NCBI GenBank assembly: GCA_028826165.1
Contig: JAPDFW010000126.1
Coordinates: 96,515-160,514, forward strand
Reading direction: 5' to 3'
From: Anaeramoeba ignava BMAN
Taxonomy: Eukaryota > Protista > Anaeramoebae
Length of the DNA: 64,000 nt
Positions 1 to 24,400 of the stretch are shown one piece after another. Within the stretch, counting starts at the first letter, position 1, and each line of letters starts with the position of its first letter. The notes beneath the pieces are model-generated. The model was not told the DNA's origin. It ran no database searches and saw nothing but the letters and a program-made list of their open reading frames with translations. A program made the position numbers and the translations under genes.

Positions 1-3000
1 GGGATTCCAAAAACTTCATTCATTTCTAATTTTGGAAATTCTTTTCTTGTTTGTGATTCATATAAACAACGAAGAGTAGATTGCTATTTTTGAATTTGAA
101 TTGAAATTTATTTTTAAAGAATTTGAATTGAAATTTGAATTTAAATTGAAATTTGAATTTTAATTTGAATTTTTTACTAAAACACCTCCAGCAACAGAGA
201 ACGAACATCCAGCTGATGATGTTATAGAAAAAGGTGGATCAAAAGAATCTTCTTCAAGTTTCCGTAAATCAATAGAATGATTTTGAAGGATTTTTCCAAA
301 CTCTCTTACAGTAATTGATAAATCAACATCAGAAATATTTTCAGATTGAATATTTTTCAATTTATTCTGATATTTGTTTGCAATACAAGGAGTGATCGTA
401 ACACATCGAATATTTTCAGGAGATTTTTCCAATTTTTGAGCAAAATAGCTTTTGACAACTGATCCAAAAATTTGGTTTGGTGATTTTGTTGTTGATAAAT
501 GAGGAATCAAAGAAGGATAAAGTTTTTCAATCATGTAAACCGAAGAAACACAATTTGATGTTAAAATAGGTAAAATAGCTTGAGTATCATTAAGTCTTTT
601 CATTAATTCTGTTGAAAGTTCAATAGCATAAATATCTGATGAAAATTGAAGACTAAAAATTGTGTGAAATCCAAGAATTCTTAATGATTTAACAATTTGT
701 CCTGGTGTGATTGCACCTAATTCCTTGCCATAAAGTTCACTAATTGTTGTGAATAAGGAAGGATCAATTCCAACAACAAGATGATAATCATTTTTTTGAG
801 TTAAGAATTGTTCAAAGATGTGAGTTTCATCAAATTCAGAAAGAGCATCACTTGGGCAATAATAACTATTAGAAAATTTTTAATTTGATTTAAATATTTT
901 GATTTGATTTAAATATTTTGAATTAATTTGAATATTTTGAATTAATTTAAATAATTTGATTTAATTTGATTTGAATATTTTGAATTGATTTAAATATTTT
1001 AATTTAATTTAAATATTTTAATTTAATTTAAATATTTTGGTTTGATTTAAATATTTTGATTTGATTTAAATATTTTGATTTAATTTAAATATTTTTGATT
1101 TGATTTAAATATTTTGAATTAATTTAAATATTTTGATTTAATTTAAATATTTTTGATTTGATTTAAATATTTTGATTTAATTTAAATATTTTGATTTAAT
1201 TTAAATATTTTGAATTGATTTAAATATTTTGGATTGATTTAAATATTTTGAATTAATTTAAATAATTTGATTTGATTTAAATATTTTGAATTAATTTAAA
1301 TATTTTGAATTAATTTAAATATTTTGAATTAATTTGAATATTTTGAATTGATTTAAATATTTTAATTTGATTTAAATATTTTAATTTAATTTAAATATTT
1401 TAATTTAATTTAAATATTTTGAATTGATTTAAATATTTTGAATTGATTTAAATATTTTGATTTGATTTAAATATTTTGAATTGATTTAAATATTTTGAAT
1501 TAATTTGAATATTTTGAATTAATTTAAATAATTTGATTTAATTTGATTTGAATATTTTGATTTGATTTAAATATTTTAATTTAATTTAAATATTTTGAAT
1601 TAATTTAAATATTTTAATTTGATTTAAATATTTTGATTTAATTTGAATATTTTGATTTGATTTAAATATTTTAATTTGATTTAAATAGTTTGATTTGATT
1701 TAAATATTTTGATTTAATTTAAATATTTTGATTTAATTTGAATATTTTGATTTGATTTAAATATTTTGATTTAATTTGAATATTTTTGATTTAATTTGAA
1801 TATTTTTGATTTGAATTTAAATATTTTGATTTAATTTGAATATTTTGATTTAATTTAAATATTTTAATTTGATTTAAATAGTTTGATTTGATTTAAATAT
1901 TTTGATTTAATTTAAATATTTTGAATTGATTTAAATATTTTGAATTGATTTAAATATTTTAATTTGATTTGAATATTTTGAATTGATTTAATTTAAATAT
2001 TTTGAATTAATTTGAATATTTTGATTTGATTTAAATATTTTTGATTTAATTTGAATATTTTTGATTTGAATTTAAATATTTTGAATTGATTTAAATAGTT
2101 TGATTTGATTTAAATATTTTGATTTGATTTAAATATTTAGAATTGATTTAAATATTTTGAATTGATTTAAATATTTTGATTTGATTTAAATATTTTAATT
2201 TAATTTAAATATTTTGATTTGATTTAAATATTTTGATTGATTTAAATATTTTGATTTGATTTAAATATTTTGAATTGATTTAAATATTTTGATTTAATTT
2301 AAATATTTTGATTTGATTTAATTTAAATATTTTGAATTGATTTAAATATTTTAATTTGATTTAATTTAAATATTTTGAATTGATTTAAATATTTTAATTT
2401 GATTTAAATATTTTAATTTGATTTAAATATTTTGAATTGATTTAAATATTTTTGATTTGATTTAAATATTTTTGATTTGATTTAAATATTTTGAATTAAT
2501 TTAAATATTTTGATTTAATTTAAATAATTTGATTTAATTTGATTTGAATATTTTGATTTAATTTAAATATTTTGATTTAATTTAATTCAAATATTTTAAT
2601 TTAATTTAAATATTTTGGATTGATTTAATTTAAATATTTTGAATTGATTTAAATATTTTGAATTGATTTGAATATTTTGAATTGATTTAAATATTTTGAT
2701 TTGATTTAAATATTTTGAATTGATTTAAATATTTTGATTTAATTTAAATATTTTAATTTACGTGCATAAACCACAATAAATACAATCAGAATCACTTAAA
2801 GATTTCCCATTTACTTTTAATGTTGATTGATGAGGACCTTCAGTTTCTTCAAGTGAAAAAACAGAAATTCCTTGAATTCTTGAACAAACTTAGAAAGAAA
2901 AAAAGAAAAAAAGAAAAATCAAAAACATGATTTGAATATTTAATTTGGGAAAGATAAAAAAAATATACCTTGTTCACATCTTCCACAATCAATACATTTA

Positions 3001-5446
3001 GATAAATCAAGAGTAACTGCTTGAGTTGAATTATCAATGAAACATTGATTGGAACTTTGCAAAAAATCAGTTAATTCATTTGAATTTCCCATTTTTTCAG
3101 ACATTAAATTCATATTTCGTGATTCAATTTTGGAAGTTAAATTCAAAAGACTTTTACGTAAACTTTCCTTTGTAAGATCAGTATCAGTTCTTATATTCAT
3201 TCCTTCTCTAATAGGAGTAGCACAAGAACAACATTTTTTGAAGGAATGACCAATTCCTTCAATTTCAACAACACAAAATTTGCAAGTAGCCAAAGGATGA
3301 AGACTAGGATGATAACATAAACTTTGCACATTTGCTCCTGATTTGCGACAAGCCTCAAGAACATTTAAATTGGAATCAACATGACATCTTTTGCCATTAA
3401 TAGTGACAACCACTTTAGTTTGACTGACATTTTTTCCTTTTAAAACAAAATCCTTTTTGAATCGAGTGATTTTTTCTTTTTCTTGTTGAATCAATGAAAG
3501 CGAACGTGAACGTGATTTGGAATATGAACTAACAAGAGGCCAACGGATGATATTCCGATCTTCTGAACCACTAAGAATAGCGCCACTTGGGCTTATTTTG
3601 ATTGTTGATATCGGCGCACTGTGTCCTTCAAGTAAAGATACACAACTTTCGTTATTTAAATTCCATACTTTGATTTTTCCATCAGTTCCTCCAGATACTA
3701 AATATGAATCTTGCATTTGGATTACCCTTACTTTCCCTGCGTGTGCTGATATAAACTTCCCTTTGCTCTTTTTCTCAGAAAATATTCCAATTTTTCCATC
3801 CCATGAACCACTGTAGATTTTATTGTTATAAAGAAGTAATTGAACAACTGCATATTCATGTCCTTCATATGTTTTAATACATTTTCCTGACTAAATAAAT
3901 TTTATTTTGAATTTGATTTTGATTTTAATTTTGAATTTGAATTTGATTTTGAATTTACTTTGGTATCCCAAGATTTAATTGTACAATCTAAATAATAAAA
4001 GAAATTAAAAAATTTATTAAGAATTTTAATTTCAAAAAAATCATAAAAATTATTTTACCATTTGAACCAGTATAAAGAATTTGTTTTTCTTCATCAAAAG
4101 CCATTGAAAGAACCCAATTTTGATGACCTTTAAAAGTTAAAATTTGTTGAGAATTCTAAAAATGAAAGAAAAGATAATAAATATTTATTTTGTTTTGAAT
4201 ATTTAATATTTATTAAATATTTATTTAAATATTTGATTTATTTTAAATATTTATTTGATTTATTTTGAATATTTAAATATTTAATATTTTGAATATTTAA
4301 ATATTTGTTTTGTTTTGAATATTTAATATTTATTTAATATTTATTTAATATTTATTTAATATTTATTTTTAATATTTATTTAATATTTATTTAATATTTA
4401 TTTAATATTTATTTAAATATTTGTTTAATATTTTGAATATTTTAATATTTGTTTTGTTTGAATATTTAAATATTTGTTTTTGTTTGAATATTTAAATATT
4501 TAATATTTTGAATATTTAAATATTTAATATTTTGAATATTTAAATATTTGTTTGAATATTTGATTTATTTTAAATATTTAATATTTATTTAATATTTATT
4601 TTATTTAAATATTTATTTAATATTTATTTTGTTTTTAATATTGAATATTTATTTAATATTTAATATTTAATATTTATTTTGAATATTTAATATTTAAATA
4701 TTTGATTTGTTTGAATATTTGATTTGTTTGAATATTTTTTTAAAATACTTCAACATCCCATAAAATAGCTTGTGAATCCATTGAAGAAGAAAATAACCTC
4801 TTTTGGTCAATTGTTGCATATAATTGACTAATTTGATCAGTATGAGCAAGATATTGTCTAATAAGATTCCCATTTGAAGTATTCCATAACTTAATTGTAT
4901 GATCGACTCCACCTGAAAAAAGAAGGTCATTACGATTGTGAAAAGAAGAAACTTTGCCTTCATGACCCTTAAAAATAGTCAAGGGATGATAATTCATAAC
5001 ATCCCAAGAAATCAACACTCCTTTAATATCACAACTATATAAAATTCCTTTATGAATATTAAGTGAATTAACAAATGATTCATGTTTAGAAAGTGTTGCA
5101 ACACATTTTCCAGTCTTTTTTTGAAATGTTGAGAATTTTTTTATTTTTTATTTATTTTATTTAATTTATTTTGAGAAAATTCGTTTTCAAAATGAAAAAT
5201 TTTTTTTTTTTTTTGCTTTTTACATCAAAATCCCAACATTTAATAACATTTTCATTTGCGCAAGTATAAAATTGATTTTCATCTGTTGAAACTTCTATTG
5301 AATTTATTGCACTTTCATGAGCTTCAACTTGAAATAACGGTTCAATTGTCTAAATTTATTTAAAAATTTGATTTTAAATTTATTTTTCCAAAAAAAATAA
5401 TTATTATTGAGATCTTTACTTGTGTATTATTTGATGAAGTATTCAT
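1..5446 (-). CDS. WD40-repeat / [FeFe]-hydrogenase-like fusion protein, multi-exon, 3' end outside window
   Basis: Hand-spliced GT-AG exons keep one frame: 5446-5420, 5349-5224, 5114-4749, 4155-4059, 3987-3959, 3890-2969, 2888-2762, 865-178, 83-<1. Eight GH...WD-type repeats, then 2Fe-2S motif (SLCYHPSLHPLATCKFCVVE...CCSCATP), two 4Fe-4S motifs (CIDCGRCEQVC; CIYCGLCTYYCPSDAL), then H-cluster-domain sequence (LPILTSNC, HLSTTKSPNQIFG, TITPCIANK, DVDLSITVRE, FDPPF, AGGVLQSTLR). Confidence 0.9.
866..2761 (-). repeat. ~1.9-kb intron made of a degenerate ~19-bp tandem repeat (aaatattttgatttgattt)
   Basis: GT at 2761-2760 and AG at 867-866; splits the CGLCT|YYCP ferredoxin motif; repeat visible throughout. 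Confidence 0.9.
4156..4748 (-). repeat. Intron with (aatattt)-type simple repeat
   Basis: Between WD40 exons 3 and 4; GT/AG ends restore the frame. Confidence 0.8.
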
Positions 5447-5527: not shown

Positions 5528-8500
5528 TTAATTTTTTTGATTTGAAAAATTTAATGTAAATTCATAAACTGAAACTAAATTCCCTAATAAAATTATATTT
5601 TTTCGATCAAAATTATTCTTAATTTCATTATAAATTTGGGAATTTTTATCTTTAATTGAAAAAAGTAATAATTTTCTAAATGGATAAATTGGATCAAATT
5701 TTGTTGCAATTTTAGTTATAAATTGTTCTAATAAATCAATAAATTTATCAATATCAATATCAATTCTTTTTAAAGAGTTTTGTAATTCATTAATTTGAGA
5801 CTCTTCCAAACCAGATTTAAATTTTTCTGGAAGTTTTTCAATAATTTTTTTTAAATCATATTTTAAATGATTTTGAAAAAATAAAAGATGTTTTAATTTT
5901 GCTTGTTCTTTAAAAGTAGGTGAAGAAAGTCCAATATCATCAAAAATATCAATTTCCATTTTATTTTGTATAAATTCCATAATTGATAATTCTGTTAATT
6001 CATTCATTTCATTTGATTCATTCATTTTATTTAAATCTTTCATTTTATTTAAATCTTTCATTTCATTTAAATCTTTCATTTTATTTAAATCTTTCATTTC
6101 ATTTGAATTTTCCATTTCATTTAAATCTTTCATTTCATTTGAATCTTTCATTTCATTTGAATCTTTCATTTCAATCATTTTGCAACTTGGAATCACAAGT
6201 TCAATTAATTCTTTGCATTTTCCATATAACCCATAATTTTCCAATTCATTTTTGATTTTTCTCCAAATTTTAATATCAATTTCTTCTTGTTTCCAATTTT
6301 CATTATTAAGAAATTCAATATCTAATTCTGGTTTTTCATCGTAATAAATAAAATTTTTAATTTTGGAAGATAAAATAAATGGTTTCTTTAAATTTTCAAT
6401 TTCTTTTTTAATATAATTTTCAAAAATTTTAAGTTCATTAAATGAATTATTATAATTATTGATTTTCTCAAATTCTTTCATATCAAAATTGAAAAATTGA
6501 ATTGAATTGAAATCATTTAAAGAAATTGGATAATTAATTTCTTGATTTTCATAATTCTCTTGATTAATTTTGTTAAAAATTGAAGATAGTAATTTTGATT
6601 GAATAAATTTGTTATTAAGATTAATTCCATGTTGAATTAATGTTGAAATCATTAAATTATAGTTTTCTTTTCCTGGCAAACAAACATCAATAAAAGATTC
6701 TTCATTAATTTCAATTATAAATTCATTGATTGGAATTTCATTCATAATTTGTAAATATTTTGTTTCTTTTGAACATAAATTCCAATATTCTTGAAATTGG
6801 AAATATAAATCTTGATTTTCATTTTCAATAGTATTTTTGAATTGAATTGTTCTGGATTCTTTTCTTGTTATTTTTTGATTAAATTTTTGCATTACATAAC
6901 TTCCAAATTTGATAAATCCTTCAAATAAATTCAATATTTTCAATTCTTGGATATTTTCAATAACAAATTTAACAAATGGAAACATTATTGAGTTTTCTTC
7001 TTTTTGATAAAATAAATTGATAACATGATATAAATTTGTTTTTGGTAAATCAAATAAATTTAATTTATCACTTGGTTGTTTGAATATCTTCTGGATTTTC
7101 TTTGTGTTTTTAATAACTTTCTCGATAATTGTTGAATGATTTTTGTTATAAATATTTGAAAAAACTTCTTCAAATTTGTTTCTATAATCTAAATCCAAGA
7201 AATTGTCTTTTCTGAATAACTTTTCAGGAATCTTATATTGAGAAATCAAATTCAAGGTTTCATGATAATAAAGAATTGTTTGGTAATTTGATAAATTTAA
7301 TAATCCTGATAAAATGGATAAATCATTCCCAATGTGTGATCTTAATTGATTAATTAATTCTTCTTGTGTTTCTGGTTTAAAAACAAAATTATTAATAAGT
7401 GAAATGAAATGTTTGGAAAATTTTTCTGATATTATTGAAATTGAAATAACTGAAAGATGAATAAATAAGCGAATAATTCTGAAAGTTATTGGATGCATTT
7501 TCCTAAATGTAAATGCTGGATTTGTATTTAGGAATTTAGAAACTGAATATGAAGTGCAATTTTCAAAAAATTTGGAATCAATTTTCTTTTGATTTTGATT
7601 TACTTTTAATTTGGATAAACAAAATCCACACCAATTTTGTAAATTAATATGTGAAAATTTAACAAAATTTAAATGATTTTTTTTGCATAAAGACCATAAA
7701 TTGAGTTTATCTTCTTCTTCTTTTTCATTTATAAAATCTGGATAAAATGAATAAGATCCCATTGAAGGCCAATATAATTTTTCAAGTAATTCTTGTTTTA
7801 ATTTTGATTCTCCAACTTCGAATATAAGATCTGATGAAAACAAAAACTGAAATGGTTCAATTTTCAATCCACTAATAAACTCAATAGAATGAATTGCCAT
7901 TTTGATAATTTCTTCATCTTCAATTTTTTCTTCAATTTTAGATAAATTTTGGAATAATTTGGAATCTAAATAACTTGTTCCATGTTCACTAACAAATCCA
8001 ATATGAGATTCTGTAAATTGATTTAATAAATTATTTCCAATTTTGTTTTGTTCATAATAATGTATCAATGTTTTCTCTTTTTTCTTTCCTTTAATATTAA
8101 TATCAAGAAAATCTTCTTGAAATTTATTAAGAATCTCTTGTGAAAATTTACATTCTTTAATTTTTTCATCAACAGAATTTTTGATAAATTTTTTGAGATT
8201 ATTAATTCCTTGTGTTTTTTGAATTTCATTGTAAATAAATTTCAACCAAGTATCTTGTTTTTTTATTAAACTATTCTTCATTTTATTGATAAATTTTTGT
8301 GGTTTTTGAATAAAATTTTTTCTTGATTTAAGAAATTTTGCAATTTTTCTAAGTGAAAATCCATCTTTGGAAAAGATTGCTATAATATTTTTGGATTTCT
8401 TTTTTTCTTGATCTTCTTTTCTTTGAATAAAATATTTGATTAATTTTTCATTTTCATTAAGAATTTTCATACAACAGATAAGAATAATATTTTCTTGTTG

Positions 8501-11500
8501 ATTTTCCAATAATTTTAAATTTGTTTTTTGTAACATTTCCTCAACAAAATTTATAATATCATCTTCTTCGTTTAATGAAATTAAATTTGTTAATAATGGG
8601 ATATAAACTGAATATAAAATTTCAATGGAATTTAATGATAATAAATAGTTTGTTTTGGGAATTAAATAATTGAAAAATTGTTGAATATTTGTGAAATCAA
8701 ATTTTCCTTTCATTTTCTTATTGAAAAGTAATTTTTTGAAAATAATTTCTCCATAAAATGCCAAATATTTTATAAAATTTAAAATAATAGAACGTATTTT
8801 TTTTCTATAATGATCAATATAATTTTCATTTAGAATTGAGAAATGTTTATTATTTTTGTGGAAAGTTTCTTCACAAATTGGACATTTGTTTTTGATTTTC
8901 ATCTTCTTCTTTAGATTTAGATTTAGAATTAGAATTTGATTTAGAATTAGATTTAGAATTAGATTTAGATTTAGATTTAGATTTTCTTTTGGGTTTAATT
9001 GTAAGATAAATTTGTAATTTTTCTTTTTGTGATTTTTTGCAAATCAAAATATTATTGCAATTAACATTTTGAGAAAATAATTCTTTAATCAATTCACTTG
9101 TTATTTTGTTAATCATCATTTTATCTTCAATTATTTGATAAGTTTCTTCATTAAAATTTGTTAATTCAATTCCAAATTCATTTTTAAATAATTCTAAATT
9201 CCATTCATCATAAAGAGATTCAATTGATTTTTGTTTTTTTTCTGTTTTTCCTTCATTTTCAATCAAGAAATAAAATAATTCTTCAATTTTTTTACTTTTT
9301 TCTTTGATTAAAAATTGTTCTTTTTGTAATTTTGGAATTAATTTTTTCATAAATGATAAAATTGAAAAGTGTCTAATTTTAGAAATAATTTTAAAATATG
9401 AATCAATTTCAATTAAATTAATTAAATTTTGATGAATTTTTTCAAAATAAATTTTGTAAATTTCCATAAAAGAAATATCTTCTAAATTTGAATTTTCTGA
9501 TTTATAATTTTGAACCCATTTTATCAAAAATTCAATTTTAAATGAATTTAAAAAATTTTGTTGTTGTTGATTAAAAGATAGTTTGATAAAATCTAATAAT
9601 ATCTTTCCAATAATTTCTTCATTTATTTTTTCTTTTTTAAAAATTTTCTTATTTCTTTTATCATTAAAAGGAATTTGAATAAATTCAGAAAATGGTATTT
9701 TTTGTTCTGAAATTGTTTGATATTGTTGAATTATTGAATAAATTATTGATATAAAAGGAATATCAAGTTCAATAATTTTGTTATTTTGATTTTCAATTTC
9801 AATTTCAAAGCAAGGAATTTCAAACTTATTAAAAAAAGTTTTCCACATATTATTTATAGTTTTTTGATCTGAATCTAATAATTTTAAATTTTCATTTTGA
9901 TTAATATTCTTGAAAAATATTCCAATAATAACAATTATCATTTGAATAAATTTATCATATAAAGAAGGAGAAATATATATTTCATTTTCATTTTCATTTT
10001 CATTTTGATTTTCATTTTGTTGAATTATATTTTTAATTTCAGAATCAAATAAGAAATGATTTGTTTTAATTCCCAATTCAATCATTTCTCTTATTTTTTG
10101 TGAAAAGTTAATTTCATTTTTTGATGAAAATAATTCATTTTCAATAAATTTTGTTGTTTGAATAAATTTTTCACTTGTAAAATCTATATTTCTTGAAATG
10201 GATATTTTCAAAAGTTTTCGATAAATTTCTTTCATTTTATTTTCTTTTTCAGAATCATTAATTGTATCAATTTTATGATTAAATTTTAAATCATTTATAA
10301 GAGGTAAAAATATTTTTGGATAAAGTTTTTCAATATAATAATATTCCCAATTCTTTTCAAAATAAAACGGAACATCTTTCATTTCAAATTGAGGAGATAA
10401 ATGAATAAAGATAATTATATATTTTTTTTGATTTAAATTTTGTTCAATAAAAAATTTAATTTTGAAAAATAATTCAATTTCATTTTGTTGAAAATGAATA
10501 AAAAGTATTGATTCCCTATTTTTGATTGAAGATTTGATAATTTCTATCACTTTTTTTTCTGATTGAATATTGATATCTTGGATAGAATAATTTTGTATTT
10601 TTTCTTGATTTATTTTCATTTTTGTTTCAAAACTTGTTGTAAAAATTATTGAATTTTGAATTTTGTTTCCAATAATTTCTTGATTAAATAATTCATCAAA
10701 ATTTTTGAATGAAGAAGAAAAATAATCATTTAAAATATTATTAGTTTTTTCTTCTAAATTTTTTGATTTTGGTTTTGATTTTGATATAAATTGTTTAACT
10801 TCATTCATTTTATAGAATTTACAAAGTTGAAATATTGTTTTCTTCATTATTTTTTCATTTAAATTTGAATTTAACTTTAAAATCAAAGAAATGAATAAAT
10901 TTTCATTAAATCCAAAAATTAAATCTTTTGTTTGAATTTTGTTTCGTGTAATAGTTTCAATTGGATCAAAAAATTTATTAATTTTCTTGAGGAAATTTTG
11001 CTCTTTTTTGGATAAAGAAAAAGAATAATTAAAAAAGGAATTTAAAGAAGAAGTTGTTGATCCATCAATAAAATGTTTTTCAAAATGATTTAATAAATTT
11101 TGTTCTTTGAATTCGTAATCATTTTCTTTTATTGTAACTAATACTAATCTAAATTTTGGATTGATAAATACTTTTCTTTCCTCATTATAAAATTGAATTT
11201 TTGTATAAAATTTCCCATTTTCTTCATCAAAATTTTGATTGAGTAAATTGTTTAAAAATGGATATATTTTTTGATAATCAAAAATCACTAATATTTTCCC
11301 TTCAGAAATACAATATTCAATATTAAATAATTTTTCTTTAATTTTTTCTTCTTTTGGGATTGTAGAAATATTTAATGGTTTATCAAATAATAATAAATCT
11401 TTATCAAAAATAACAATTGAATCTGGGAAATATTTTTGATAAATAATTGAAAAAATTGAAATGTGTGAAATAATTAGCATTAAATAACGAGATGTTTTCA

Positions 11501-14500
11501 TAAATTCAAAATATGATTGATCTGATTCTTCTTGTAATTTTTTTGTTTTATAAAGATTTTCTGTTATTAATTTTTCTAAATCAAATTTGGGAATTGTTTT
11601 AAAACCATCAATTTGATTTAATTTTAAAACTTCTTTCAATATTTTTCCTCTAATTCCAAAATTTCTATAAAGAGAATTAAATAGAACATCTGAAAAAATT
11701 GAATAATTATTTTTTGAGAAATAAAATCCAATATTCTTAAGGAAAAAATAATAATCATAAATCCCATAAAAGTTTTTTGTTAAGTTTTTTTCTTGAATTT
11801 TGATTAAATTTGTTTGTTTTGAGATTAAAATTTTTTGATTTTGACAAATTCCATTAAATATTTTAACAAAATATTTGAAATAATTCTTTGGTGATTCTCT
11901 TGGAAATGAATTTAAAATTTCTTTTGTTATTGATTCTAATTCAGTTTCATTTGGAAGTTCATTATTTAAAATAATTCCTGTTGAAATGTAATTCATTTTT
12001 GAGAATTGATTTGAAAATAAAATTAATGAAGGTTTTGTTAAAAATGATTCTAATTTTGTTAATTGAATATCTTTTTGAATTTTTTCAATTTCTAAATTAA
12101 GAGTCATTAATGTTTTATCTTTTAAATTTGTAAATTCTTTTAAAATGATAATTGGAATAATTTCTTTTTTATAATTTTGAGATAATTTTTCTGAATTGTT
12201 AAATTGATTATGAAGTTGAATTGGTGATAAAATTTGAGAACATTCAATTTTGTTAATTTGTAAATTTGGAAGATTTAATTCATTTTCATTTTCATTAAAT
12301 AATTTTAAAATGAATTTAAGAGATGTTGATTTTGAAGTTCCTAAAAATAAAAAATAAAAATTAATAATTTTTTAATTGTAAATTATATTATTAATATTAT
12401 TATTTACCTGAATTTCCAATTATAAATAAAGGTATTCGAGTAAAAAATGAAATGAATATTAATAAAACATTTTCTTTAAATGATTTAGTTTTGGCAATAT
12501 TATTTTCTGATAAATAATTATCCATATTTTGAATTAAATTTTCTGAAATTTTATAAAAATTTGTTTCAATATTCATCTTAATTTTTTCATTCTTTTTCAA
12601 TTTTTGTTGCTTTTGTTCAAATTTTAATAAAAATTCTTTTCTTTTTCCTTCATTCAAACTTGAAACATAAACAATAAATAAAGATAATAAAATAGATGAA
12701 GTAATTTGAGTTGATATTTCATTTTCTTTTATCAATTTTTGAGCTATTTTACTTGATATTAACCAATTAAAAATTTTTGAAAAAATTAAAACATCTTGAA
12801 ATGATTCAAAATATTCATTTGAAAATATTATTGATTTTGATTTTGTTTCAATTTGAAGTTTTTGAGTTAATTTTCTTGAAAAGCAAATTAATTCTGAAAT
12901 AATTTGTGATTCACTTTCTATTGAGATTTTAGAATTAAAGAAATTTTGGAGATTCTCTTTTTTTTGTTGAAATAATTGATGAAGTATTGATAAAATATAT
13001 TTCTTTTTTGAAATTTTTGTTAATTTTCCAAAATCATAAATATCTTCATAAAATGAATCAGAAATTAATTGATATTGTGAAATAAATTGTGTTTTTTCAT
13101 TTCTTTCAAATTGATTAGATGAAAAAGATTTAAGAGAAGCTAATAAATGAACATTTCCTTGTAAATTTTTCCCATTAATTGATCTATTTAATAAAATTTC
13201 TTTGATTAATGATATAGATTCTTTTGATCCTTTATTAAATTCATGAAAATAAATATTAATACGATCAATTGAATTTGGATTTTGGTTTTGAATTTGTTGA
13301 ATTTCTTGAATAATTTCTTCTTTTTTTGTTTGAAAATTAACATTGAAAATGATTAATGGTTGTTTCAAAATATCTTCTATTAAATATGTAATTAATAATA
13401 ACTTTTCATATTCATTTCCTCCATTAATAATTACTGGTATTTTTGCCCATAATTTTAATTGAATATAAATCATTTTGAATAAATTTTCTGATGTAAGAAA
13501 ATTTCCTCTTTTTTTTTGATTTTCTTCATAATTTTGAATAATTTCATTTGTTATTTCAAATGATTTTGGAATTAATGAATTAAAAATTTGTAAAATATCT
13601 TTCATTTCAATTTCAATTTTTGTTTCATTTTTTAATTTTTCATGGAAAATTATCATATTTTGATTATTAAAATTTAAACCATTTTGAAATAATTGTTTGA
13701 TTTCGGAATTACTTATAAGAAATAATTTATATTCACCTTCTTGATTGTTGTTTTTTTTGTTTCTGAAAAGAATTGGAAAAGATAAATTTCTTTTTTTCCA
13801 TTCAATTTTGTTTTTCAATAATTTTGAAGATTCTTCTAAATTATTTGAATTTTCTAAATTTGAATTAAAATGAAAAAAAGGAGAAGCAAGTTCAATATTA
13901 AAATTTAAACAATTTGTTATAATTTGATTTAAAAAAGAATAATATTTTTCTGAATCATTTTCAAAATTTTTTTGAATAATTTCATCTTTGTTAAATAATA
14001 ACCACATAAAATATTGAAGTAAATTTTTCATTAAATATTGGAAATTTGAAAAAGTTCTAAAACTTATAAATTTGGTTTGTAAATTGTTTTCAAATTGATT
14101 TAATAATAAATTGAAATATTCTTTTGAATTTGGTTCTTGATTTAAATTATTGACAATTTCTGTTAGTCCATTTGTATTTTTATATTCTCTTAAATGATTT
14201 TGATTTGATTGAATTAAATTGGCAATTCTTTTTAATTCTGGATTTTCTTCTTTTTCAATTTGAAAATTTAATATTGGATAAGAAGAAAAGGAAAAATTAT
14301 CAGAGTTCATTTTACATTCTTTTTCTTTAAAATATTTTAATGGAGGAAAATTATTTAAACCATTTTCTGAACTTGATTTAATATAACTTGGAATTTCAAA
14401 AACAATTTTAAAAGAATCATCAAAAATCCAAATTAAATTATTTTCTAATTTTCTTTCATCTTCAAATGAATTCCACATTGATAATTCCCAAAGAAAATCC

Positions 14501-17500
14501 AAAGTTTCTAAAATAGGAGAGAAAGTTAAATCAATATGAAGAAATTTAATTTTGTTTTGGAAATTAATTGAATTTTTGTTTAAAATTTGATTAATTTCTT
14601 GAATAATTTCTGATTTTGTTCCTTTTGAAATTTTGATATATAAATAAATTGCTTTGTTTTCTTGATCTTGATTATATTTTTCATAAAAATATTTACGAAT
14701 TTGATGAGTTTTTCCCATTCCTGGAATTTTAGAAGTAAATAATTTAATTCTCTTATAATTTTTGAAATGATTTTTGAAAATTGATTTTAAATTTTCTTCT
14801 GGTATTGATTCAATTTTTTCTGAAATCAAAAAATTAGGGAAATGAGAAACAATATTTGGAATTTGATAATTATCTTTTTGATAAAAGAAAATGATTAATG
14901 GAAAATGAGTTTCAAAAGAAATTTGTTGAATTTTCTGAATTAAAAAATTTGAACAAAGTTGAGATAATTTTTGAACATGTAAAATTGAAAATAAATGTTT
15001 TTCGTGATTAATCTTTGGTTTGTCTTGATTATAAAATTTATAAATATTGAAGAAATTTTCAATATCAGATTGATTTGTATTTTTTGAATTACAAATCAGA
15101 ACATTTTCTTTTAATGGTAAATGATTACAATATCCAAAATATAAACTTGTTAATATTTCATAAACTTGAATTTTTTTATCAATTTTGTAAAAGAAAATTT
15201 TTGAATTTTGAACTGATTTTTCATTTTTTTTGAATAAATGATTAAATTTCTTTGTTATTTTTTTTGGAATTTCCTTTTTTTTAAATTGTATTAATCTTTG
15301 TTGAATTGAATTTTTAAATGAAATTAAATTGCTTAATTGTTCAATAAAATTTTTTAAATTAATTGAAGGATCAAATTCAGGAATAATATTAATTCTAAAT
15401 TCTATTAAATCTTCATGAGTTAAATTTGGATTAAATAAACGAAGAAGAAGAAATAAATTATGGTTATTTTGAAGAGATGTTGAAAAACAGAGATTCATAA
15501 TTTCAAAAAGCTGTTCTTGAGAAAAAAATGAATAAACGAAATGATTTTGTTTGATTAAATCTTTTTCTTTTTTCCAATTTAATAATTTTTGAGAAAGTTC
15601 TTTTTCGTTTTTGATCAATTCATTTTTAAATTTATCTGATTCATTTATTGAAGAATATTCAATAACTTTTTCATATTTATTATTTGATTCAATAATATAA
15701 AGTTTCTTTAATTCAACACAAGTTTTGAACATTTTCTTGATTATTGGAAAAATTTTTTGGAATGAATTCAAATATTTTTGTATTGGATCATTTTCTGGGA
15801 AAAGTTCATTTTGTTTTATATTTTGAGAAATGATTTTAATTTGAAGGAAATTATCAAAATTGAATATTTTATAAGTATTCTCCTTATTTTGACAAGAGAA
15901 TATTAATTCATTTTTTGGTAAATAATTAAATTGAAAGAGCATATTTTTTTTTCCAAAAATTTCAGATAAATTATTTAATATTTTCTTTTTAAAATTTGAA
16001 TTATCTTTTGGAAAAAAATTAATTAATTCTTGAGTATCATTTTCACTAAATTGCCAAGGTTTTTGATTTTCTTCAGATTTTTTGATAATTTGAATCAAAT
16101 TTTGGAAAGATTCAAAACTTTCTTGAATTAAAATGTATTCTTTCATTCTTTTTCTTAAATTTTTGATTATATTTTTCATTTTTTTAAAATGAATAGATTT
16201 TTCGATGAACTTATCGAACTTTTTTTCATTTTGAAATTTTTTGGAAAGAGAAATAATATTTGGGATTAAATTTAGAATATTTTGTTGAGAAAAGAAAATA
16301 TTAGAAGGAATTTCGTTCAATTCTTTTAATATTCCGTTTAATTTAGATAAATCTTGTAATTTTTGATTTTTTTGCCAAGATTCTTGGAAAAATTTTGTAT
16401 AATCTTCATTTTGAAATTTAAAATATGAAAAAAATTGATATTTCCATTTTGGAATTTTTTTGAAGTTTTTGTTATATTCATGGAAATTTTGGATTTGATT
16501 TGATAACTGTAGAATATTATTCTCTGATTTTTCATTTTGAGATTCTTCTAAAAATATTTTTAATTCATTATTTATCCAATCTATTCCTTTTTCTAAAGGG
16601 AAAAATTTATCAAGTTGACTTAATTTAATTTTTTGATCTGTAATTTTAAATAAAATTTCATTTCTTTTGTTTATCATTTCTTTTAATATTTTATGAAAAT
16701 TATTCATTGATAATTTTTTTTGTTTTGATTTTAATTTTGATTTTAATTTTGGAATCCAAATATAATTAATAAAGATTTCACTTTTTTCAAATTTCAAAAT
16801 TTTTTGGAATAAATCAAAATCAATTTCTAATTCCTTAATTGATAATTTGGAGATCTTTGATGTTTTTTGAATTAAAATTTGCTAAAACTTTGGGAATTTT
16901 TGGATAAGTTTCGAAATGATTCCAAACTATATTTTTGTTTAGTTTTTGATAAAACAGTTTTTCTTTGAAATAATTCTTGATAAAGTTGTTCAATTTTTTG
17001 AAATGAAATTTTTGAATATAAATCCCAAATATTTGAAAAGAAATGTTTTTGTTTAAATGTTTCTTCTAATATTGAAAAATCTATTTCAATTTTATCTATT
17101 TTTTGAATTGAATATTGAATTTCTTTATCATATTTTTGAATTTTTTGGAAAAATTCATTTTCATTTTCATTTTCCTTTTCAATTCCCTTTTCCTGGAAAT
17201 TTTTAAATAACTTTAATAATGAAATCCATGAATCTTGATTTTCTTGAGAAATATTTTTTAAAAATAAAATGAAAGTTTGTTTTTCATTAGGAAAATTATC
17301 TCCAATAAGTGATTCCCAATATAAAATATGTATTCGTAAAGGAATTTCTTTTTCTTTTTCTTTTAAAATTAATTTATATTTTTCTTGAATAAAATCTTTG
17401 ATATATTTAGATAAGAATGTTTCAAAACTTGATAAATTATTTAATATTTTTGGATCGTTGATTATATTTAAACATTCAATAGGAGTTGCGTTATAAGGAA

Positions 17501-18848
17501 AATTATTGCTTTGAATATTTTCAATAATTAATAATTCAAGAGAAGAGATATATTCATTTATTTTTATTATTTGGATTTGGTTTTGAATTTGATTTGAATT
17601 TTCTTTTAGAATTTCGAGTATTTTTTTTGTTCTTCGATAAATTTTATCAAAATTATCAAAATATTCAAGTAAATTTTGAAATTTCATTTTTCCAATAATG
17701 AAAAAAGCTAATGAAAAATCTTTTATAATCAAATATTCCAGTAAATTATCTTTTTTTTCTTTTAAAAAATCTTTTATAATCTTAACAAGAATATCTTCAA
17801 ATTTTGGGAAAAATATAGGATCAAATAATCTTGATAAAAATAAGAAAATATTCGCTTCAGAATCTAAATATTGTTGAATCAAAATATTTATATCTTTTGT
17901 AAATTTTTTTGTATCATAATTTTGTGAAATTGTTTTCCAATCTTTTTCTTCAAATAATGTAATAAATAAAGGAAGAAAGAACAGAATATTATTTGAATTT
18001 GATTCTTTGAAAACGTTAAACAATTTGTAAAAATTTATTTTAACTTTACTAATATCTTGAGTATTACCAGAAACTTCTTCAACTATTTGAGATAATTCTT
18101 TCATTTTTTGAGGAGATTTCTCTAAAAAATTGAATATATATTGAGTAAAAGGATTGTGAATTTTTGATAATAGTAAATAACAAAATATAGTTTCTTTTGA
18201 GAAAGAATCCATAATATTTTCATCTTTTTCAAAAAATTTTTCATAAAGCATTTTCACAATTTCTGTTTTTGTAAAATTTTGACCTTTTATTTCTCCTTTG
18301 CTAACTAATAATTTATTAAATAATGAATCTATTCCTTTATCATAATTGATGATTATTTGTTGTGTATTTAAAGAACTTTGCATTATTTCGTTGATAAAAA
18401 ATGTTTGTAAAAGATCAACAATCATTTCTTGATTTATAGAAATATTCTTTTTTGATTTTTGATGAATAATTCCAAAAAAGAATAATATATTTTGATTTTC
18501 TTCTTCTTTGTTTTTTTTCTTGGAATTTTTAATTTCAGTTTGAATTTCTTCTTTATCAACTGTTAAAATAAATTGTCTTTTCAATTTGTTTTTTGCTAAA
18601 GTGATTTCAATTTTGATATTAAAAGAAATTTGAGAATCTTTTTTTGATTGTGAAGTATTTTCTTCTTGTAAATTAATTTGTGTTTGAAAAGTAGTAAACC
18701 AAACATTATTAATTGAATTTGATTTATAAATATCGTAATATTGATTTTTGTATTTTAAAGACATTTTTATAGGTATTTCTTTTTCTTTTTCTTTTGTATA
18801 ATAAAGAAAAATTTTTATAAAATATTTTGTGTTGTTTGATAAATTCAT
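5528..18848 (-). CDS. RNF213/mysterin-like giant AAA+ protein (~4400 aa), degenerate paralogue A
   Basis: Collinear ORFs 18848-16872, 16797-12400, 12107-8871, 8902-5528. Intron 12407-12341 restores GNSGTSKS (RNF213 GKPGSSKS). Probable intron 16955-16882. 1-nt frameshift near 8890-8900. Motifs FTSKIPGMGKT, FLTSENLFKMIYI, FKENVLLIF, INPKFRLVLV...LLNHFEKH and an RZ-like C-x3-H...CxxC are collinear with paralogue B. Confidence 0.82.
5990..6175 (-). repeat. Coding 18-bp repeat (EMKDLN)n in paralogue A
   Basis: Translation shows EMKDSNEMKDSNEMKDLN...KMKDLN. Confidence 0.85.
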
Positions 18849-18954: not shown

Positions 18955-21315
18955 TTTTTAAAATTATAATTTAAAATTTAATTAAATGTTTAAATATATA
19001 TTTTACTTTATTTATTTAATATATATTATTAATCAAAAATTGAAATTAATTTAATATAAAAATATAAATAAATTTAATAACTTTAATAAATTAATAAATT
19101 AATAAATTATTTTAAAATTATAATTTAAAATATAATTAAATGTTTAAATATATATTTTACTTTATTTATTTAATATATATTATTAATTAAAAATTGAAAT
19201 TAATTTAATATAAAAATATAAATAAATTTAATAACTTTAATAAATTAATTAATAAATAAATTATTTTAAAATTATAATTTAAAATTTAATTAAATGTTTA
19301 AATATATATTTTACTTTATTTATTTAATATATATTATTAATTAAAAATTGAAATTAATTTAATATAAAAATATAAATAAATTTAATAACTTTAATAAATT
19401 AATTAATAAATAAATTATTTTAAAATTATAATTTAAAATTATAATTAAATGTTTAAATATATATTTTACTTTATTTATTTAATATATATTATTAATCAAA
19501 AATTGAAATTAATTTAATATAAAAATATAAATAAATTTAATAACTTTAATAAATTAATTAATTAATAAATTATTTTAAAATTATAATTTTAAATATAATT
19601 AAATGTTTAAATACATATTTTACTTTATTTATTTAATATATATTATTAATCAAAAATTGAAATTAATTTAATATAAAAATATAAATAAATTTAATAACTT
19701 TAATAAATTAATTAATAAATAAATTATTTTAAAATTATAATTTAAAATTTAATTAAATGTTTAGATATATATTTTACTTTATTTATTTAATATATATTAT
19801 TAATCAAAAATTGAAATTAATTTAATATAAAAATATAAATAAATTTAATAACTTTAATAAATTAATTAATAAATAAATTATTTTAAAATTATAATTTAAA
19901 ATATAATTAAATGTTTAAATATATATTTTACTTTTATTTATTTAATATATATTATTAATCAAAAATTGAAATTAATTTAATATAAAAATATAAATAAATT
20001 TAATAACTTTAATAAATTAATTAATTAATAAATTATTTTAAAATTATAATTTATATTATAATTAAATGTTTAAATATATATTTTACTTTATTTATTTAAT
20101 ATATATTATTAATCAAAAATTGAAATTAATTTAATATAAAAATATAAATAAATTTAATAACTTTAATAAATTAATTAATAAATAAATTATTTTAAAATTA
20201 TAATTTAAAATATAATTAAATGTTTAGATATATATTTTACTTTATTTATTTAATATATATTATTAATCAAAAATTGAAATTAATTTAATATAAAAATATT
20301 AATAAATTTAATAACTTTAATAAATTAATTAATAAATAAATTATTTTAAAATTATAATTTTAAATATAATTAAATATTTAAATATATATATTACTTTTAT
20401 TTATTTAATATATGTTATTAATCAAAATTGAAATTAATTTAATATAAAAATATAAATAAATTTGATAACTTTAATAAATTAATTAATTAATAAATTATTT
20501 TAAAATTATAATTTAAAAATTTAATTAAATGTTTAGATATATATTTTTACTTTATTTATTTAATATATATTATTAATCAAAAATTGAAATTAATTTAATC
20601 TAAAAATATTAATAAATTTAATAACTTTAATAAATTAATTAATAAATAAATTATTTTAAAATTATAATTTAAAATATAATTAAATGTTTAGATATATATT
20701 TTACTTTATTTATTTAATATATATTATTAATCAAAAATTGAAATTAATTTAATATAAAAATATAAATAAATTTAATAACTTTAATAAATTAATTAATTAA
20801 TAAATTATTTTAAAATTATAATTTTAAATTAAATTAAATGTTTAAATATATATTTTATTTTTATTTATTTAATATATATTATTAATCAAAAATTGAAATT
20901 AATTTAATCTAAAAATATAAATAAATTTAATAACTTTAATAAATTAATTAATTAATAAATTATTTTAAAATTATAATTTAAAATATAATTAAATGTTTAA
21001 ATATATATTTTACTTTATTTATTTAATATATATTATTAATCAAAAATTGAAATTAATTTAATATAAAAATATAAATAAATTTAATAACTTTAATAAATTA
21101 ATTAATAAATAAATTATTTTAAAATTATAATTTAAAATTAAATTAAATGTTTAAATATATATTTTACTTTATTTATTTAGTATATATTATTAATTAAAAA
21201 TTGAAATTAATTTAATCTAAAAATATTAATAAATTTAATAACTTTAATAAATTAATTAATAAATAAATTATTTTAAAATTATAATTTAAAATTTAATTAA
21301 ATGTTTAAATATATA
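18955..21315. repeat. Tandem satellite, ~154-bp unit, ~15 copies, almost pure A/T
   Basis: Anchor aaattataat recurs at 18961, 19115, 19269 and onward; copies are highly similar (aaatgtttaaatatatattttactttatttatttaatatatattattaatcaaaaattgaaattaa...). Confidence 0.95.
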
Positions 21316-21402
21316 ATTAACTTATTCAAAAAAAAAAGCAAAAATATTTTTCCAAATTTTTTTTTTCATTTTTTTTTTTCAAATTTTAATTTTGTTAACA
21401 AA

Positions 21403-24400
21403 ATGAATTTTTTCAGTTTTGATCAACAAAATAATCCAGTTACAAAAATTTTTCCAGAATTTGAAGGGTTTCTAACACCTGAAAAGGATCAATTCCACAC
21501 ATTGCTTTACAATTTCTATTCAACAAGTGCAGCAAAAGTTGTAATTGATCGAAAAATAAAAGAAATAAAAGAAACCTCAGAAAGACAAGAATCAACACTT
21601 TGGAGAATGGAGAGCCGTTCACAAACACAATCCAAATATTGTCACGGAAACCATTTAACAGCAAGCGTTACTTACACTGTTGCTATTTATGATTCTGATG
21701 TTGCGATGAAACTGAACCAAACGTATTCGCAACTGATCCGAAGTTGTCATACTGAGTTGTGTGAGATAACTACCAAAGTGGAGACAACAGAAGCGAAGGT
21801 TGCGCTTTATTTACAGAGAGTTTTCCAGGGAATTCCTTTTAAAAGCCTTCGAAACGATGAGAATATGAACCTTCAGTTCATCCAACAATTGCGTTCTCTT
21901 TTGATCAATTTGTTTTTTTTTGAAAGACTTGCGATTGAAACAGGCGAGGTTTATTACGATAAGTTTAACAATTCTCTGCACAAATGGATCAATACTGTTG
22001 CTCTTCGTTTGTATGAAATTGGGTCTAATAATCAAATGCTTTTTGTGTTTTTTCATTTATTAACAACTCCTCATTCAGGAAAATGGTCCAAAAACTTGAT
22101 TTATCTTCAAGACAATTTCGATTACGATCAAATGAGTTATCTCAAAACATTATTGAAATTTGTTGTGAATCCCTTGATTAAATCAAAGACTCTTTCTGAT
22201 AAGCCTTTCTATCTTCTTGAACCTGATTTTGTTCATCATCTTTCCAATCTTCCTTTTTCCAATTTTTTCGGTTATTTATTCGCAAATCCAGGAGAGTTAG
22301 GGTTCTCAGTTGCCAGTGAGATTGTTCAGGAGTTTGTGATGATTCTCATTGAAGCGTTAGTGAGATTTGAGAAGTATCTTGATTTCCGAAAAACAATTGC
22401 TGATCTCATGTTCCATTTCTTTTGGCTTTATGATGAGTTTTCGCACCATATCAACACACCCGATGCCGCAAGAGACTACCCCAAGATCATTGATGAGCTC
22501 ACTACGATATCGATTGGAAGAGTCTCTGCTTGTCAAGACAAGTCAATTCTTTTTTATTTCACTGATCTTCCTTTTTATTCTTTATCTGTTTTTGCTGGAT
22601 TTCGAATTATGAGTCTTTTCTTCACAGGTTCTGACCAGAATCCCCCACAAAACCCCGAGCAATGGTACCAGCTTATGAATAGTGATCCCAGTCTTGTTAG
22701 TCGTTTCGGGTCTCTTCTTCAGTCATCTAACGGAGGAGAAAGTATGCTTATCATTCTTGCAAATTTGGCAGTTCTTTTAAATTCGCCAGATTTTGCTTTG
22801 TGTGTTGTTGATTTGATTTTCAGAGTCAGTTGTGTTGTAGATACCACAAAAGACAGAATATTCCCGCATGGAAAAAAACCCTTGCAACAATCACCACAGA
22901 ATATCCCTTTCTGGTTTCAAATATTCTCGCTCTCACTTCCCAATATATTGGTGTTGTCGGTTCTCGCAGTATGGATTTATTTGGTGCTCTTCCTCTCTCC
23001 AAATGGAAACTGAATGACAACGATCTCTCAGTGATTCAAACATATCTCGATATGCCAAACGATTCCGTTCAGTTTGTCTTTGGGTCTTGGCTTGTGGATA
23101 ATCTTTTTTGGGGATATTCGCCAGAGATTGATGGCACAGGCGTGCTCAATGATAGTGAGGCGCAGTTCAAAATTATACCGTGTATTTTGAAAGTGTTTTT
23201 ACGACAAACCAAGAATAAAAGTCTCATTGATTGGTGTTGGCGTGCTCTTTATCGATTCAATGTTTACAATAAATTTGGCGAACCAAATGGAACTTTACTT
23301 AAATTTCCCAATGATTCTCGTCTTGATTTGTCCAAGCATATCCCAAAAGGATAAGAAACAATCCCCTGAACCTTTTATCGCATTTCTCGCCCTGATGTTT
23401 TTCGAGATCCGTGACAACTCCACTTGGGATCAATTCTTCCAAAATCTTTTAAAAGCCAAGGAGTATTATTCAATGACGAAAGTTCTTCATGTCAAAATTC
23501 CTCAAATTTTGAAAAATAACAAGGATCCATATTTCAAGAAAGAAGTTGCAACCATTTCAGAATTGGTAAAGCCTTTGCTCAAGATTGATAAGTTCAATGC
23601 TCATGTTGAAGAGAAAAATAAGAGCGTCAATTTCAAAAGATGCAATGCTTTGGCATCAATGATTGAATCATTAATTATGAACAGGATGAATGTCAATGTC
23701 CCTTTTCATAAACAAGATTTTTCAAATGAAACGAGCACAAGTATCAATGATAATATTGCTAATGTCAATGAGAATATTGCTAATGTCAACGAGAATATGG
23801 ATAATACAGTTCAAGGAAATTTGGATCAAAATCAAAATCAAGAAAATTTGAATCAAAATGAAAATCAAAATTTGAATGACAAGGATAATCCAGTTCCTCT
23901 TGAAAAAATGATTCAATTCTGGTTGCAGTTTTTCGAATCGATCCCGAAATGGAACAAAGACAAGCAAATCATTAAGTATTTTGACATCATTTTCCGTTCC
24001 GCTTTCATGTGCCGATCACGACCGTTAATCACAAGATTTATAGCAAAAGAATATAGCAAAATTGCGAAAGGCAAAAAAAAAACAGGAGTTTTTTCAAAAA
24101 AAGAAAAACAGGTTACACTAATTGATGTTGGGAAAACATTTGTGCATCGGGGAAGGACAAAAATCATGAACAAATCACCGTGGTATTATTTTGAGGTTCT
24201 TCTTGTTGAGCTTATTTGGCACGCAGAGAGATTGGATTCATTAGGAATCAAAATCAATAAATCAAAAGATATTCCATTGAAACAAATTCTCAAGAAAAAT
24301 AAAATCAACACAAATTTTGATATCATCAACTGGTGGATTGAGTTTGTCACTGATCTTAAAGAAAACAACCGACTTCTTCCTATTGTAATGCAAGTTGTGT

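What the first reader, a model, noticed from the sequence alone, without database searches (positions are those of the whole stretch)
178..865. H-cluster catalytic residues lost while the Fe-S wire is kept: a pseudo-hydrogenase
Seen, aligned by eye to Clostridium pasteurianum CpI motifs: P1 TSCCPxW is TSNCVSS (proton-transfer Cys299 to Asn); P2 MPCxxKKxE is TPCIANKYQ (Met353 to Thr, Lys358 to Asn, Glu361 to Gln); ADMTIMEEATEL is SDIYAIELSTEL (Glu279 to Leu); the APS/APA motif is DPS. The cubane-ligating Cys of P1 and P2 remain, as do the 2Fe-2S and both 4Fe-4S motifs. The reading frame and splice sites are intact, which argues against simple pseudogene decay. Inference: it binds [4Fe-4S] but not an active 2Fe subcluster, convergent with Nar1/IOP1. 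Motif P3 lies outside the window.
Basis: partly seen in the sequence, partly recalled or inferred. Interest (0 to 1): 0.8.

Follow-up and report, generated by a model that had tools for sequence, protein, structure and literature searches.

The report
Expressed pseudo-hydrogenase paralogue in Anaeramoeba
One of four WD40-hydrogenase-flavodoxin genes of the anaerobic amoeba Anaeramoeba ignava has lost the residues that hold and feed the hydrogen-making di-iron site, but it keeps every iron-sulfur ligand, is transcribed and correctly spliced, and has drifted fast only in its catalytic core, so it is most likely a retained non-catalytic "pseudo-hydrogenase".

Summary
Window 178-865 (minus strand) is exon 8 of a nine-exon, 1115-aa gene of Anaeramoeba ignava, deposited as plain "iron hydrogenase". 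Its domains are an eight-blade WD40, 2Fe-2S, two 4Fe-4S, the H-domain, a small-subunit motif and a flavodoxin.

A machine alignment to CpI gives A230D, E279L, C299N, P301V, W303S, M353T, K358N and E361Q. All 16 Fe-S cysteines are kept. P3 lies about 130 bases outside the window and is intact.

Asn at 299 or 358 occurs in none of 109-144 reference hydrogenases. The three in-genome paralogues and all A. flamelloides homologues keep the canonical motifs.

The gene is not decaying:
- The reading frame is open in an 81% A+T genome.
- All eight introns are GT..AG.
- A contig from another study skips both flanking introns exactly.
- Three of three sequence differences are synonymous.
- Only the H-domain core is accelerated, about 2-fold. 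WD40, 2Fe-2S and flavodoxin evolve at or below the family rate.

No orthologue was found; the nearest relative is 45% identical. I read it as a lineage-specific pseudoenzyme that resembles Nar1 in outcome but is not a Nar1 member. Loss of activity is inferred, not measured.

The scan has already noted the paralogues, and a second degenerate hydrogenase, on other contigs of this genome.

The parts
5420..5446 (-). Exon 1, with the start codon
   Evidence: Read from the sequence. It matches the first 9 residues of deposited protein P0002.
5224..5349 (-). Exon 2, WD40 blade 1
   Evidence: Its borders are AG/GT.
4749..5114 (-). Exon 3, WD40 blades 2-4
   Evidence: and Pfam WD40.
4059..4155 (-). Exon 4, WD40
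3959..3987 (-). Exon 5, WD40 (29 nt)
2969..3890 (-). Exon 6: last WD40 blades, linker, 2Fe-2S domain and the start of the first 4Fe-4S motif
   Evidence: Pfam WD40 and Fer2_4. The cysteines align with those of the paralogues.
2762..2888 (-). Exon 7: the rest of the two 4Fe-4S motifs
   Evidence: Read from the sequence. The loose end of the X4 contig at window 865 continues with window 2762 onward.
866..2761 (-). Intron 7, 1.9 kb, almost entirely an AT-rich tandem repeat
   Evidence: it is spliced out in the X4 contig and present in DNA runs X1 and X2.
178..865 (-). Exon 8: H-domain core carrying the degenerate P1 and P2 motifs (the finding)
   Evidence: Pfam Fe_hyd_lg_C at 5e-47 and the alignment to CpI.
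763..765 (-). Codon for Asp at CpI position 230 (A230D)
616..618 (-). Codon for Leu at CpI position 279 (E279L, proton pathway)
550..555 (-). Codons Asn-Cys at CpI positions 299-300. The proton-relay Cys is lost and the cubane ligand is kept.
367..393 (-). P2 motif codons TPCIANKYQ (M353T, C355 kept, K358N, E361Q)
84..177 (-). Intron 8, 94 nt, GT..AG
   Evidence: Joint 'skips 94' in the X4 contig only.
1..83 (-). Start of exon 9. It runs 883 bases past the window start and holds intact P3, the small-subunit motif, flavodoxin and the stop codon.
   Evidence: L001 519-1484 and Pfam.

Best explanation
This is a retained, expressed paralogue of the Anaeramoeba-specific WD40-[FeFe]-hydrogenase-flavodoxin family that no longer catalyses H2 turnover.

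Shown here:
- The pocket residues that hold and feed the di-iron subcluster are replaced. These are K358 and its partner E361, C299 and E279 of the proton path, A230, P301, W303 and M353.
- The four cysteines of the [4Fe-4S]H cubane, the two accessory 4Fe-4S motifs, the 2Fe-2S motif, P3, the WD40 propeller and the flavodoxin fold are all kept.
- The gene is transcribed and spliced.
- Only the H-domain core has sped up.

Inferred:
- The protein still binds its Fe-S clusters, and probably FMN.
- It does not hold a working 2Fe subcluster.
- It now acts as an electron-relay, redox-sensing or docking partner through its WD40 domain, perhaps alongside its catalytic sisters.
For: - Alignment to CpI.
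- Position table against 109-144 hydrogenases: none has N at 299 or 358.
- This protein breaks 9 of 44 conserved columns; its paralogues break 0-2.
- The paralogues on C1, C104 and C138 and all A. flamelloides homologues keep canonical P1, P2, APS and MEE.
- The nine-exon model equals deposited P0002.
- A spliced contig occurs in an independent study and is absent from the DNA runs.
- Three of three differences are synonymous.
- ML distance to the A. flamelloides clade, this copy versus its sisters:
  - WD40: 1.34 versus 1.9-2.3
  - 2Fe-2S: 1.13 versus 1.2-1.65
  - flavodoxin: 1.47 versus 1.2-1.4
  - H-domain halves: 1.54 and 1.34 versus 0.63-0.77
- HydG and HydF are present, so real H-cluster assembly exists in this organism.
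- From my own knowledge (Knorzer et al. 2012, J Biol Chem 287:1489; not readable here): exchanging the equivalent Lys in CrHydA1 gives protein without an intact H-cluster, and CpI C299S is inactive.
Against: - No biochemistry exists for this protein.
- P3 with the bridging Cys503 and M497 is perfect. P231, S232, P324, F417 and V423 are also kept, so part of the 2Fe pocket survives.
- Sensory hydrogenases tolerate changes at 299, 353 and 497 and still bind the cofactor (PMC8163306).
- No orthologue was found, so long-term conservation of the degenerate state is unproven.
- One FMN-loop residue is also changed (TGT to TGD), so FMN binding is uncertain.
- Its k-mer depth in X4 is about a tenth of a sister transcript's (15 versus 173), which is a poor measure of expression.
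Confidence: 0.62

Rival explanations
1. It still binds a 2Fe subcluster and works as a slow or sensory hydrogenase. This would be analogous to bacterial group C/D HydS, with WD40 acting as the output or docking module.
For: P3, C503, M497, P231, S232, P324, F417 and V423 are kept. The maturases HydG and HydF are encoded. HydS enzymes lack C299 and the group A proton pathway, carry M353S/T, and still bind the cofactor. M353T is shared with the C138 sister copy.
Against: K358N and E361Q were seen in none and 1% of reference hydrogenases respectively. A230D puts a carboxylate next to the ligand shell. There is no PAS domain or extra C-terminal Cys cluster. The sister copies carry the same WD40, so the propeller is not tied to the change.
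Confidence: 0.2
2. It has taken on a Nar1-like role in cytosolic Fe-S protein assembly, using its fused WD40 in place of Cia1 and its NDOR1-like FMN domain in place of Tah18.
For: It has the same outcome as Nar1: the cubane ligands are kept and the catalytic Cys is lost. The best solved match of the flavodoxin domain is human NDOR1, at 6e-25. Nar1 binds a WD40 protein in trans (my own knowledge).
Against: The genome has its own Nar1-like gene on C90 with STCPG and the Nar1-type P3. The WD40 resembles generic WDR5/FBXW7-type propellers, not CIAO1 in particular. The catalytic sisters share the same WD40 and flavodoxin. The protein nests in the HydA-flavodoxin clade.
Confidence: 0.08
3. It is a decaying duplicate on its way to becoming a pseudogene.
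For: It has the longest branch in the family and no orthologue. One sister copy (C138) carries a frameshift, so the family does shed members.
Against: A 1115-codon frame stays open after roughly one substitution per site in an 81% A+T genome. There are eight GT..AG introns and a spliced transcript. All 16 Fe-S cysteines are kept. WD40, 2Fe-2S and flavodoxin are not accelerated. Three of three differences are synonymous.
Confidence: 0.06

Closest known systems
Sister WD40-HydA-flavodoxin genes of Anaeramoeba (A. ignava P0003/KAJ5077271 and the copies on C104 and C138; A. flamelloides P0005, P0151-P0153, P0181)
   Same: The domain order is collinear and the family is monophyletic at 100% support. 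All members lack the His-ligated FS4C cluster.
   Different: All the sisters keep TSCCPxW, PCTxKKxE, APS and MEE. Only this copy has lost them, and it also lacks the intron that splits the H-domain in the sisters.
Hydrogenase-CysJ fusions of anaerobic protists (for example Mastigella eilhardi P0154, P0040, P0063)
   Same: They share 2Fe-2S, 4Fe-4S, H-domain, small-subunit motif and flavodoxin in the same order, and they are the nearest outgroup.
   Different: They carry FAD and NAD(P) domains, have no WD40, and keep the catalytic motifs.
Nar1 / NARFL (IOP1)
   Same: Both are hydrogenase-derived proteins that keep the cubane cysteines and lack the proton-relay Cys.
   Different: Nar1 belongs to a different clade and has a different N-terminus (no 2Fe-2S). 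The A. ignava Nar1-like gene keeps CPG in P1 and MP at the start of P2. It is a separate gene in this genome.
Sensory [FeFe]-hydrogenases, groups C and D (Tm HydS, Tam HydS)
   Same: C299 and proton-pathway residues are replaced, and M353 is changed to a hydroxyl residue (PMC8163306).
   Different: Those are bacterial, with PAS and/or a C-terminal four-Cys cluster, and they still bind the 2Fe cofactor. Here K358 and E361 are lost as well.

Membership tests
[FeFe]-hydrogenase, catalytic group A | H-domain (Pfam PF02906) with the small-subunit motif | tested here: met
   PF02906 scores 218 bits over residues 593-877, against 280-316 bits for the catalytic relatives scanned in the same call. PF02256 is also found.
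[FeFe]-hydrogenase, catalytic group A | Four Cys ligands of [4Fe-4S]H, including the bridging Cys503, and the P3 motif | tested here: met
   C300, C355, C499, C503 and P3 are intact.
[FeFe]-hydrogenase, catalytic group A | P1 motif TSCCPxW with the proton-relay Cys299 | tested here: not met
   It reads TSNCVSS. C is found in 92% of references and N in none.
[FeFe]-hydrogenase, catalytic group A | P2 motif MPCxxKKxE with Lys358 and Glu361 | tested here: not met
   It reads TPCIANKYQ. K is found in 97% and E in 99% of references.
[FeFe]-hydrogenase, catalytic group A | H2 evolution or uptake | not testable with these tools
   This needs anaerobic expression and an activity assay.
Anaeramoeba WD40-HydA-flavodoxin family | Collinear WD40, 2Fe-2S, two 4Fe-4S, H-domain, small-subunit motif and flavodoxin, and membership of the clade | tested here: met
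   (clade support 100%).
Nar1 / NARFL | Placement in the Nar1 lineage, with a ferredoxin-like N-terminus and no 2Fe-2S domain | tested here: not met
   It nests with the HydA-flavodoxin fusions and has Fer2_4. A separate Nar1-like gene lies on C90.
Nar1 / NARFL | A role in cytosolic Fe-S assembly | not testable with these tools
   This needs genetics or interaction data.
Sensory hydrogenase, groups C/D | PAS domain or a C-terminal Cx2Cx4Cx16C cluster | tested here: not met
   Neither appears in the Pfam scan or in the sequence.
Sensory hydrogenase, groups C/D | Cys299 and the proton pathway replaced while the cofactor is still bound | tested here: inconclusive
   C299N and E279L are met, and S319, E282 and R286 are kept. 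Cofactor binding cannot be tested here.

The most novel reading that the evidence does not exclude
This is a naturally evolved pseudo-hydrogenase whose [4Fe-4S]H site and flavin have been repurposed as a redox sensor or electron gate. It would dock through its WD40 propeller onto the same partners as its catalytic sisters and regulate cytosolic H2 metabolism. That would make it a second, independent origin of a hydrogenase-derived non-enzyme in eukaryotes, besides Nar1.
Probability: 0.2. Interest if true: 0.7.

Novelty: new variant of a known kind. Interest (0 to 1): 0.5.

Why it matters
Nar1/NARFL is the best-known eukaryotic protein derived from a hydrogenase that has given up H2 chemistry. 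This gene would be a second case. It is younger and its history can be traced, because its catalytic sisters are still present in the same genome. That gives a natural before-and-after pair for asking which second-sphere residues are needed to hold the di-iron cofactor (C299N, K358N, E361Q, A230D). It also bears on what the undescribed WD40-hydrogenase-flavodoxin architecture of Anaeramoeba does. The practical stake is modest: the gene is deposited as "iron hydrogenase", and metabolic reconstructions that count it as an H2-producing enzyme probably overcount.

Tried and rejected
- **Rfam on the whole window:** no match, so it gave no help with taxonomy.
- **Word-index protein search with residues 330-1115:** it saturated at 8000 candidates and even missed the in-genome sister P0003. 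I therefore did not use it alone to argue absence; the exhaustive representative search carries that claim.
- **Literature on WD40-hydrogenase fusions or this gene**: only Anaeramoeba genome papers turned up, and none discusses these genes.
- **Experimental data on K358N** and PMC3256906: the paper is not held, so Knorzer et al. 2012 is cited from memory.
- **dN/dS against the paralogues:** not attempted, because at 40-45% protein identity synonymous sites are saturated.
- **Structure prediction:** not run, because the tools return no coordinates and pocket geometry could not have been read.
- **Spliced models of the C104 and C138 sisters:** They were analysed exon piece by exon piece. Full-length analyses used only proteins returned by the databases.

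Full report
**What is there.** The window is extremely A+T-rich. It is contig C127:96515-160514 of a 42.8-Mb assembly. On the minus strand between window 5446 and 883 bases beyond the window start lies a nine-exon gene. Its exons, in window coordinates, are:
- 5446-5420
- 5349-5224
- 5114-4749
- 4155-4059
- 3987-3959
- 3890-2969
- 2888-2762
- 865-178
- 83 to -883 (L001 1484-519)

All eight introns are GT..AG. The exons sum to 1115 codons plus a stop. An exhaustive HMMER search with exon 8 alone returned a 1115-aa protein, P0002, that is 100% identical over that exon. It matches my exon-by-exon reading end to end. The source names it "iron hydrogenase [Anaeramoeba ignava]". I searched the spliced model exon by exon, by reference, and did not join exons myself. 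All full-length work used P0002 and other proteins that the databases returned.

**Architecture.** Pfam finds WD40 repeats over residues 1-330 (eight blades by my count of the repeat ends), Fer2_4, Fe_hyd_lg_C (218 bits), Fe_hyd_SSU and Flavodoxin_1. Two CxxCxxCxxxC motifs span exons 6-8. The WD40 part resembles generic WDR5/FBXW7-type propellers. The flavodoxin's best solved match is the FMN domain of human NDOR1.

| CpI position | State here |
|---|---|
| A230 | D |
| E279 | L |
| C299 | N |
| P301 | V |
| G302 | S |
| W303 | S |
| M353 | T |
| K358 | N |
| E361 | Q |
| C300, C355 | kept |
| S319, E282, R286 | kept |

It is perfect, including M497, C499 and C503. Together with the four 2Fe-2S cysteines and the eight cysteines of the two 4Fe-4S motifs, 16 of 16 cluster ligands are kept.

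I aligned 109-144 of the 150 best representative hydrogenases to each half of the exon. Position 358 is K in 97%, 361 is E in 99%, and 299 is C in 92%. None has Asn at 299 or 358. Of 44 columns that are at least 90% conserved, this protein breaks nine: D267S, A272S, E279L, C299N, P301V, W303S, K358N, E361Q and E425Q.

**Family context.** The genome holds about ten hydrogenase-family loci.
- Three of them, on C1 (= P0003), C104 and C138, have the same collinear WD40-to-flavodoxin architecture. They are 40-50% identical to this copy.
- A. flamelloides has at least five such genes: P0005/P0182, P0151, P0152, P0153 and P0004/P0181.
- Every one of these keeps TSCCPxW (one has SSCCPSW), PCTxKKxE, APS and MEE.
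- Nothing with this architecture was found outside Anaeramoeba. The long relatives elsewhere are hydrogenase-CysJ or other fusions.
- HydG and HydF are encoded, so the organism does build H-clusters.
- A separate Nar1-like gene sits on C90.

**Is it a dying gene?** No, on five counts.
1. The frame is open over 1115 codons. This holds despite roughly one amino-acid substitution per site on its own branch, in a genome reported as 80.65% A+T (PMC11550330).
2. Run X4 comes from a different study than the assembly's reads. It holds a 1728-nt contig that skips window 84-177 exactly and runs from window 865 straight into window 2762. DNA runs X1 and X2 keep the 94-base intron. This is the signature of a spliced transcript, although the run's type is not on record.
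3. The three differences between these runs and the assembly are all synonymous third-position changes. The sample is small.
4. All cluster ligands are kept.
5. The acceleration is domain-specific, which I find the most telling point.

ML distances to the A. flamelloides clade, used as a common yardstick:

| Region | This copy | Three sister copies |
|---|---|---|
| WD40 blades | 1.34 | 1.9-2.3 |
| 2Fe-2S | 1.13 | 1.2-1.65 |
| Flavodoxin | 1.47 | 1.2-1.4 |
| H-domain C-terminal part | 1.35 | 1.06-1.31 |
| H-domain core, first half | 1.54 | 0.69-0.77 |
| H-domain core, second half | 1.34 | 0.63-0.76 |

In the sisters the catalytic core is the slowest part of the protein. In this copy it has dropped to the pace of the other domains, while those domains are unchanged. 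That is what release from catalytic constraint, with the rest of the protein retained, should look like.

One caveat: the C138 sister carries a one-base frameshift in an A-run. This is either real decay or a long-read error. It was used only as one of three comparators.

**Age and orthology.** No protein in the 1.84-billion representative library is closer than 45% to exon 8. The word search found nothing above 40% over residues 330-1115. The source paper gives a mean of 37.3% identity between orthologues of the two sequenced species, so identity alone cannot settle orthology.

In a full-length tree the A. flamelloides copies form one clade (100%). This protein is sister to P0003 with only 64% support. 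Per-exon trees place it unstably, on the longest branch each time. It is therefore either an early A. ignava duplicate or an older lineage lost from A. flamelloides. In both cases the degenerate state is known from this one gene only.

**Mechanism.** Shown here:
- the substitutions and their uniqueness;
- the retained ligands;
- expression and splicing;
- the rate pattern.

From established knowledge of CpI and CrHydA1 (my own knowledge; the key paper, Knorzer et al. 2012, could not be opened):
- Lys358 hydrogen-bonds a cyanide of the 2Fe subcluster, and its exchange yields protein without an intact H-cluster.
- Cys299 is the first proton relay, and C299S is inactive.
- Glu279 is the next relay.

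Inferred: the protein binds 2Fe-2S, two 4Fe-4S and the H-site cubane, and probably FMN. One phosphate-loop Thr is Asp here, so FMN binding is uncertain. It holds no working di-iron site and serves as an electron relay, sensor or docking partner.

Against this, sensory hydrogenases lack Cys299 and the group A proton pathway, have Ser or Thr at 353, and still bind the cofactor (PMC8163306). Much of the pocket also survives here (P231, S232, P324, F417, V423, M497, C503). I give that rival 0.2.

**Comparison with the known.** It resembles Nar1 in what it has lost. It is not a Nar1 member by clade, by N-terminal domains or by motif detail. It is a member of the Anaeramoeba WD40-HydA-flavodoxin family, which is deposited but was not discussed in any paper I could search. 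Earlier notes of this scan on other contigs say the same of the sisters and of a second degenerate hydrogenase.

**Verdict.** It is a new variant of a known kind of thing, a hydrogenase-derived pseudoenzyme, in an unusual fusion. Biochemistry is needed to close the case.

Noticed in passing
G000:C129:24000-31000 (L032, minus strand, 445-aa open frame): A second, more degenerate hydrogenase-like gene with no accessory cluster domains. P1 reads SSSCSPW and P2 reads MRCSLKND. P3 is reduced to two Cys, without the GGGGQP tail. An earlier scan note (s1-689657) seems to describe it.
   Followed up: partly
G000:C138 (L031, about 6100-6170): The sister WD40-hydrogenase-flavodoxin copy with canonical motifs has a one-base frameshift in an A-run just after the intron that follows GGVM. 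This is either a real pseudogene or a long-read homopolymer error.
   Followed up: partly
window 866-2761 and 4170-4748: Two introns of this gene consist almost wholly of AT-rich tandem repeats of about 20 bases. The 1.9-kb one is still removed precisely. Similar repeat units match hundreds of places in the genome.
   Followed up: partly
L001 775-817 and 1228-1268 (record 17 of run X4): A 3584-nt contig of a sister copy overlaps only the most conserved stretches. Its k-mer depth is 173, against 15 for this gene. This is a rough hint that the catalytic sister is expressed more strongly.
   Followed up: no
window 21300-28300, plus strand: An island of about 36% G+C in a background of 17-20%, filled by a chain of long open frames (570, 617 and 1080 aa). 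It looks like one large gene with unusually conserved composition.
   Followed up: no
window 38001-40000: A 2-kb stretch with 0.7% G+C.
   Followed up: no
window 5528-18848 and 53215-62898, minus strand: Two very large AAA/RING-like (RNF213-like) genes flank the region. Other scan notes already cover them.
   Followed up: no
G000:C84:145890-148402, C62:501941-504369 and C62:512106-513056: HydG is present in three intron-split copies, two of them about 8 kb apart on C62. HydF is on C104, about 30 kb from the C104 WD40-hydrogenase copy.
   Followed up: no
P0152 (A. flamelloides, 1707 aa): One A. flamelloides family member carries an extra N-terminal part of about 560 aa, with B-box and filamin-type Pfam hits, ahead of the WD40 propeller.
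   Followed up: no
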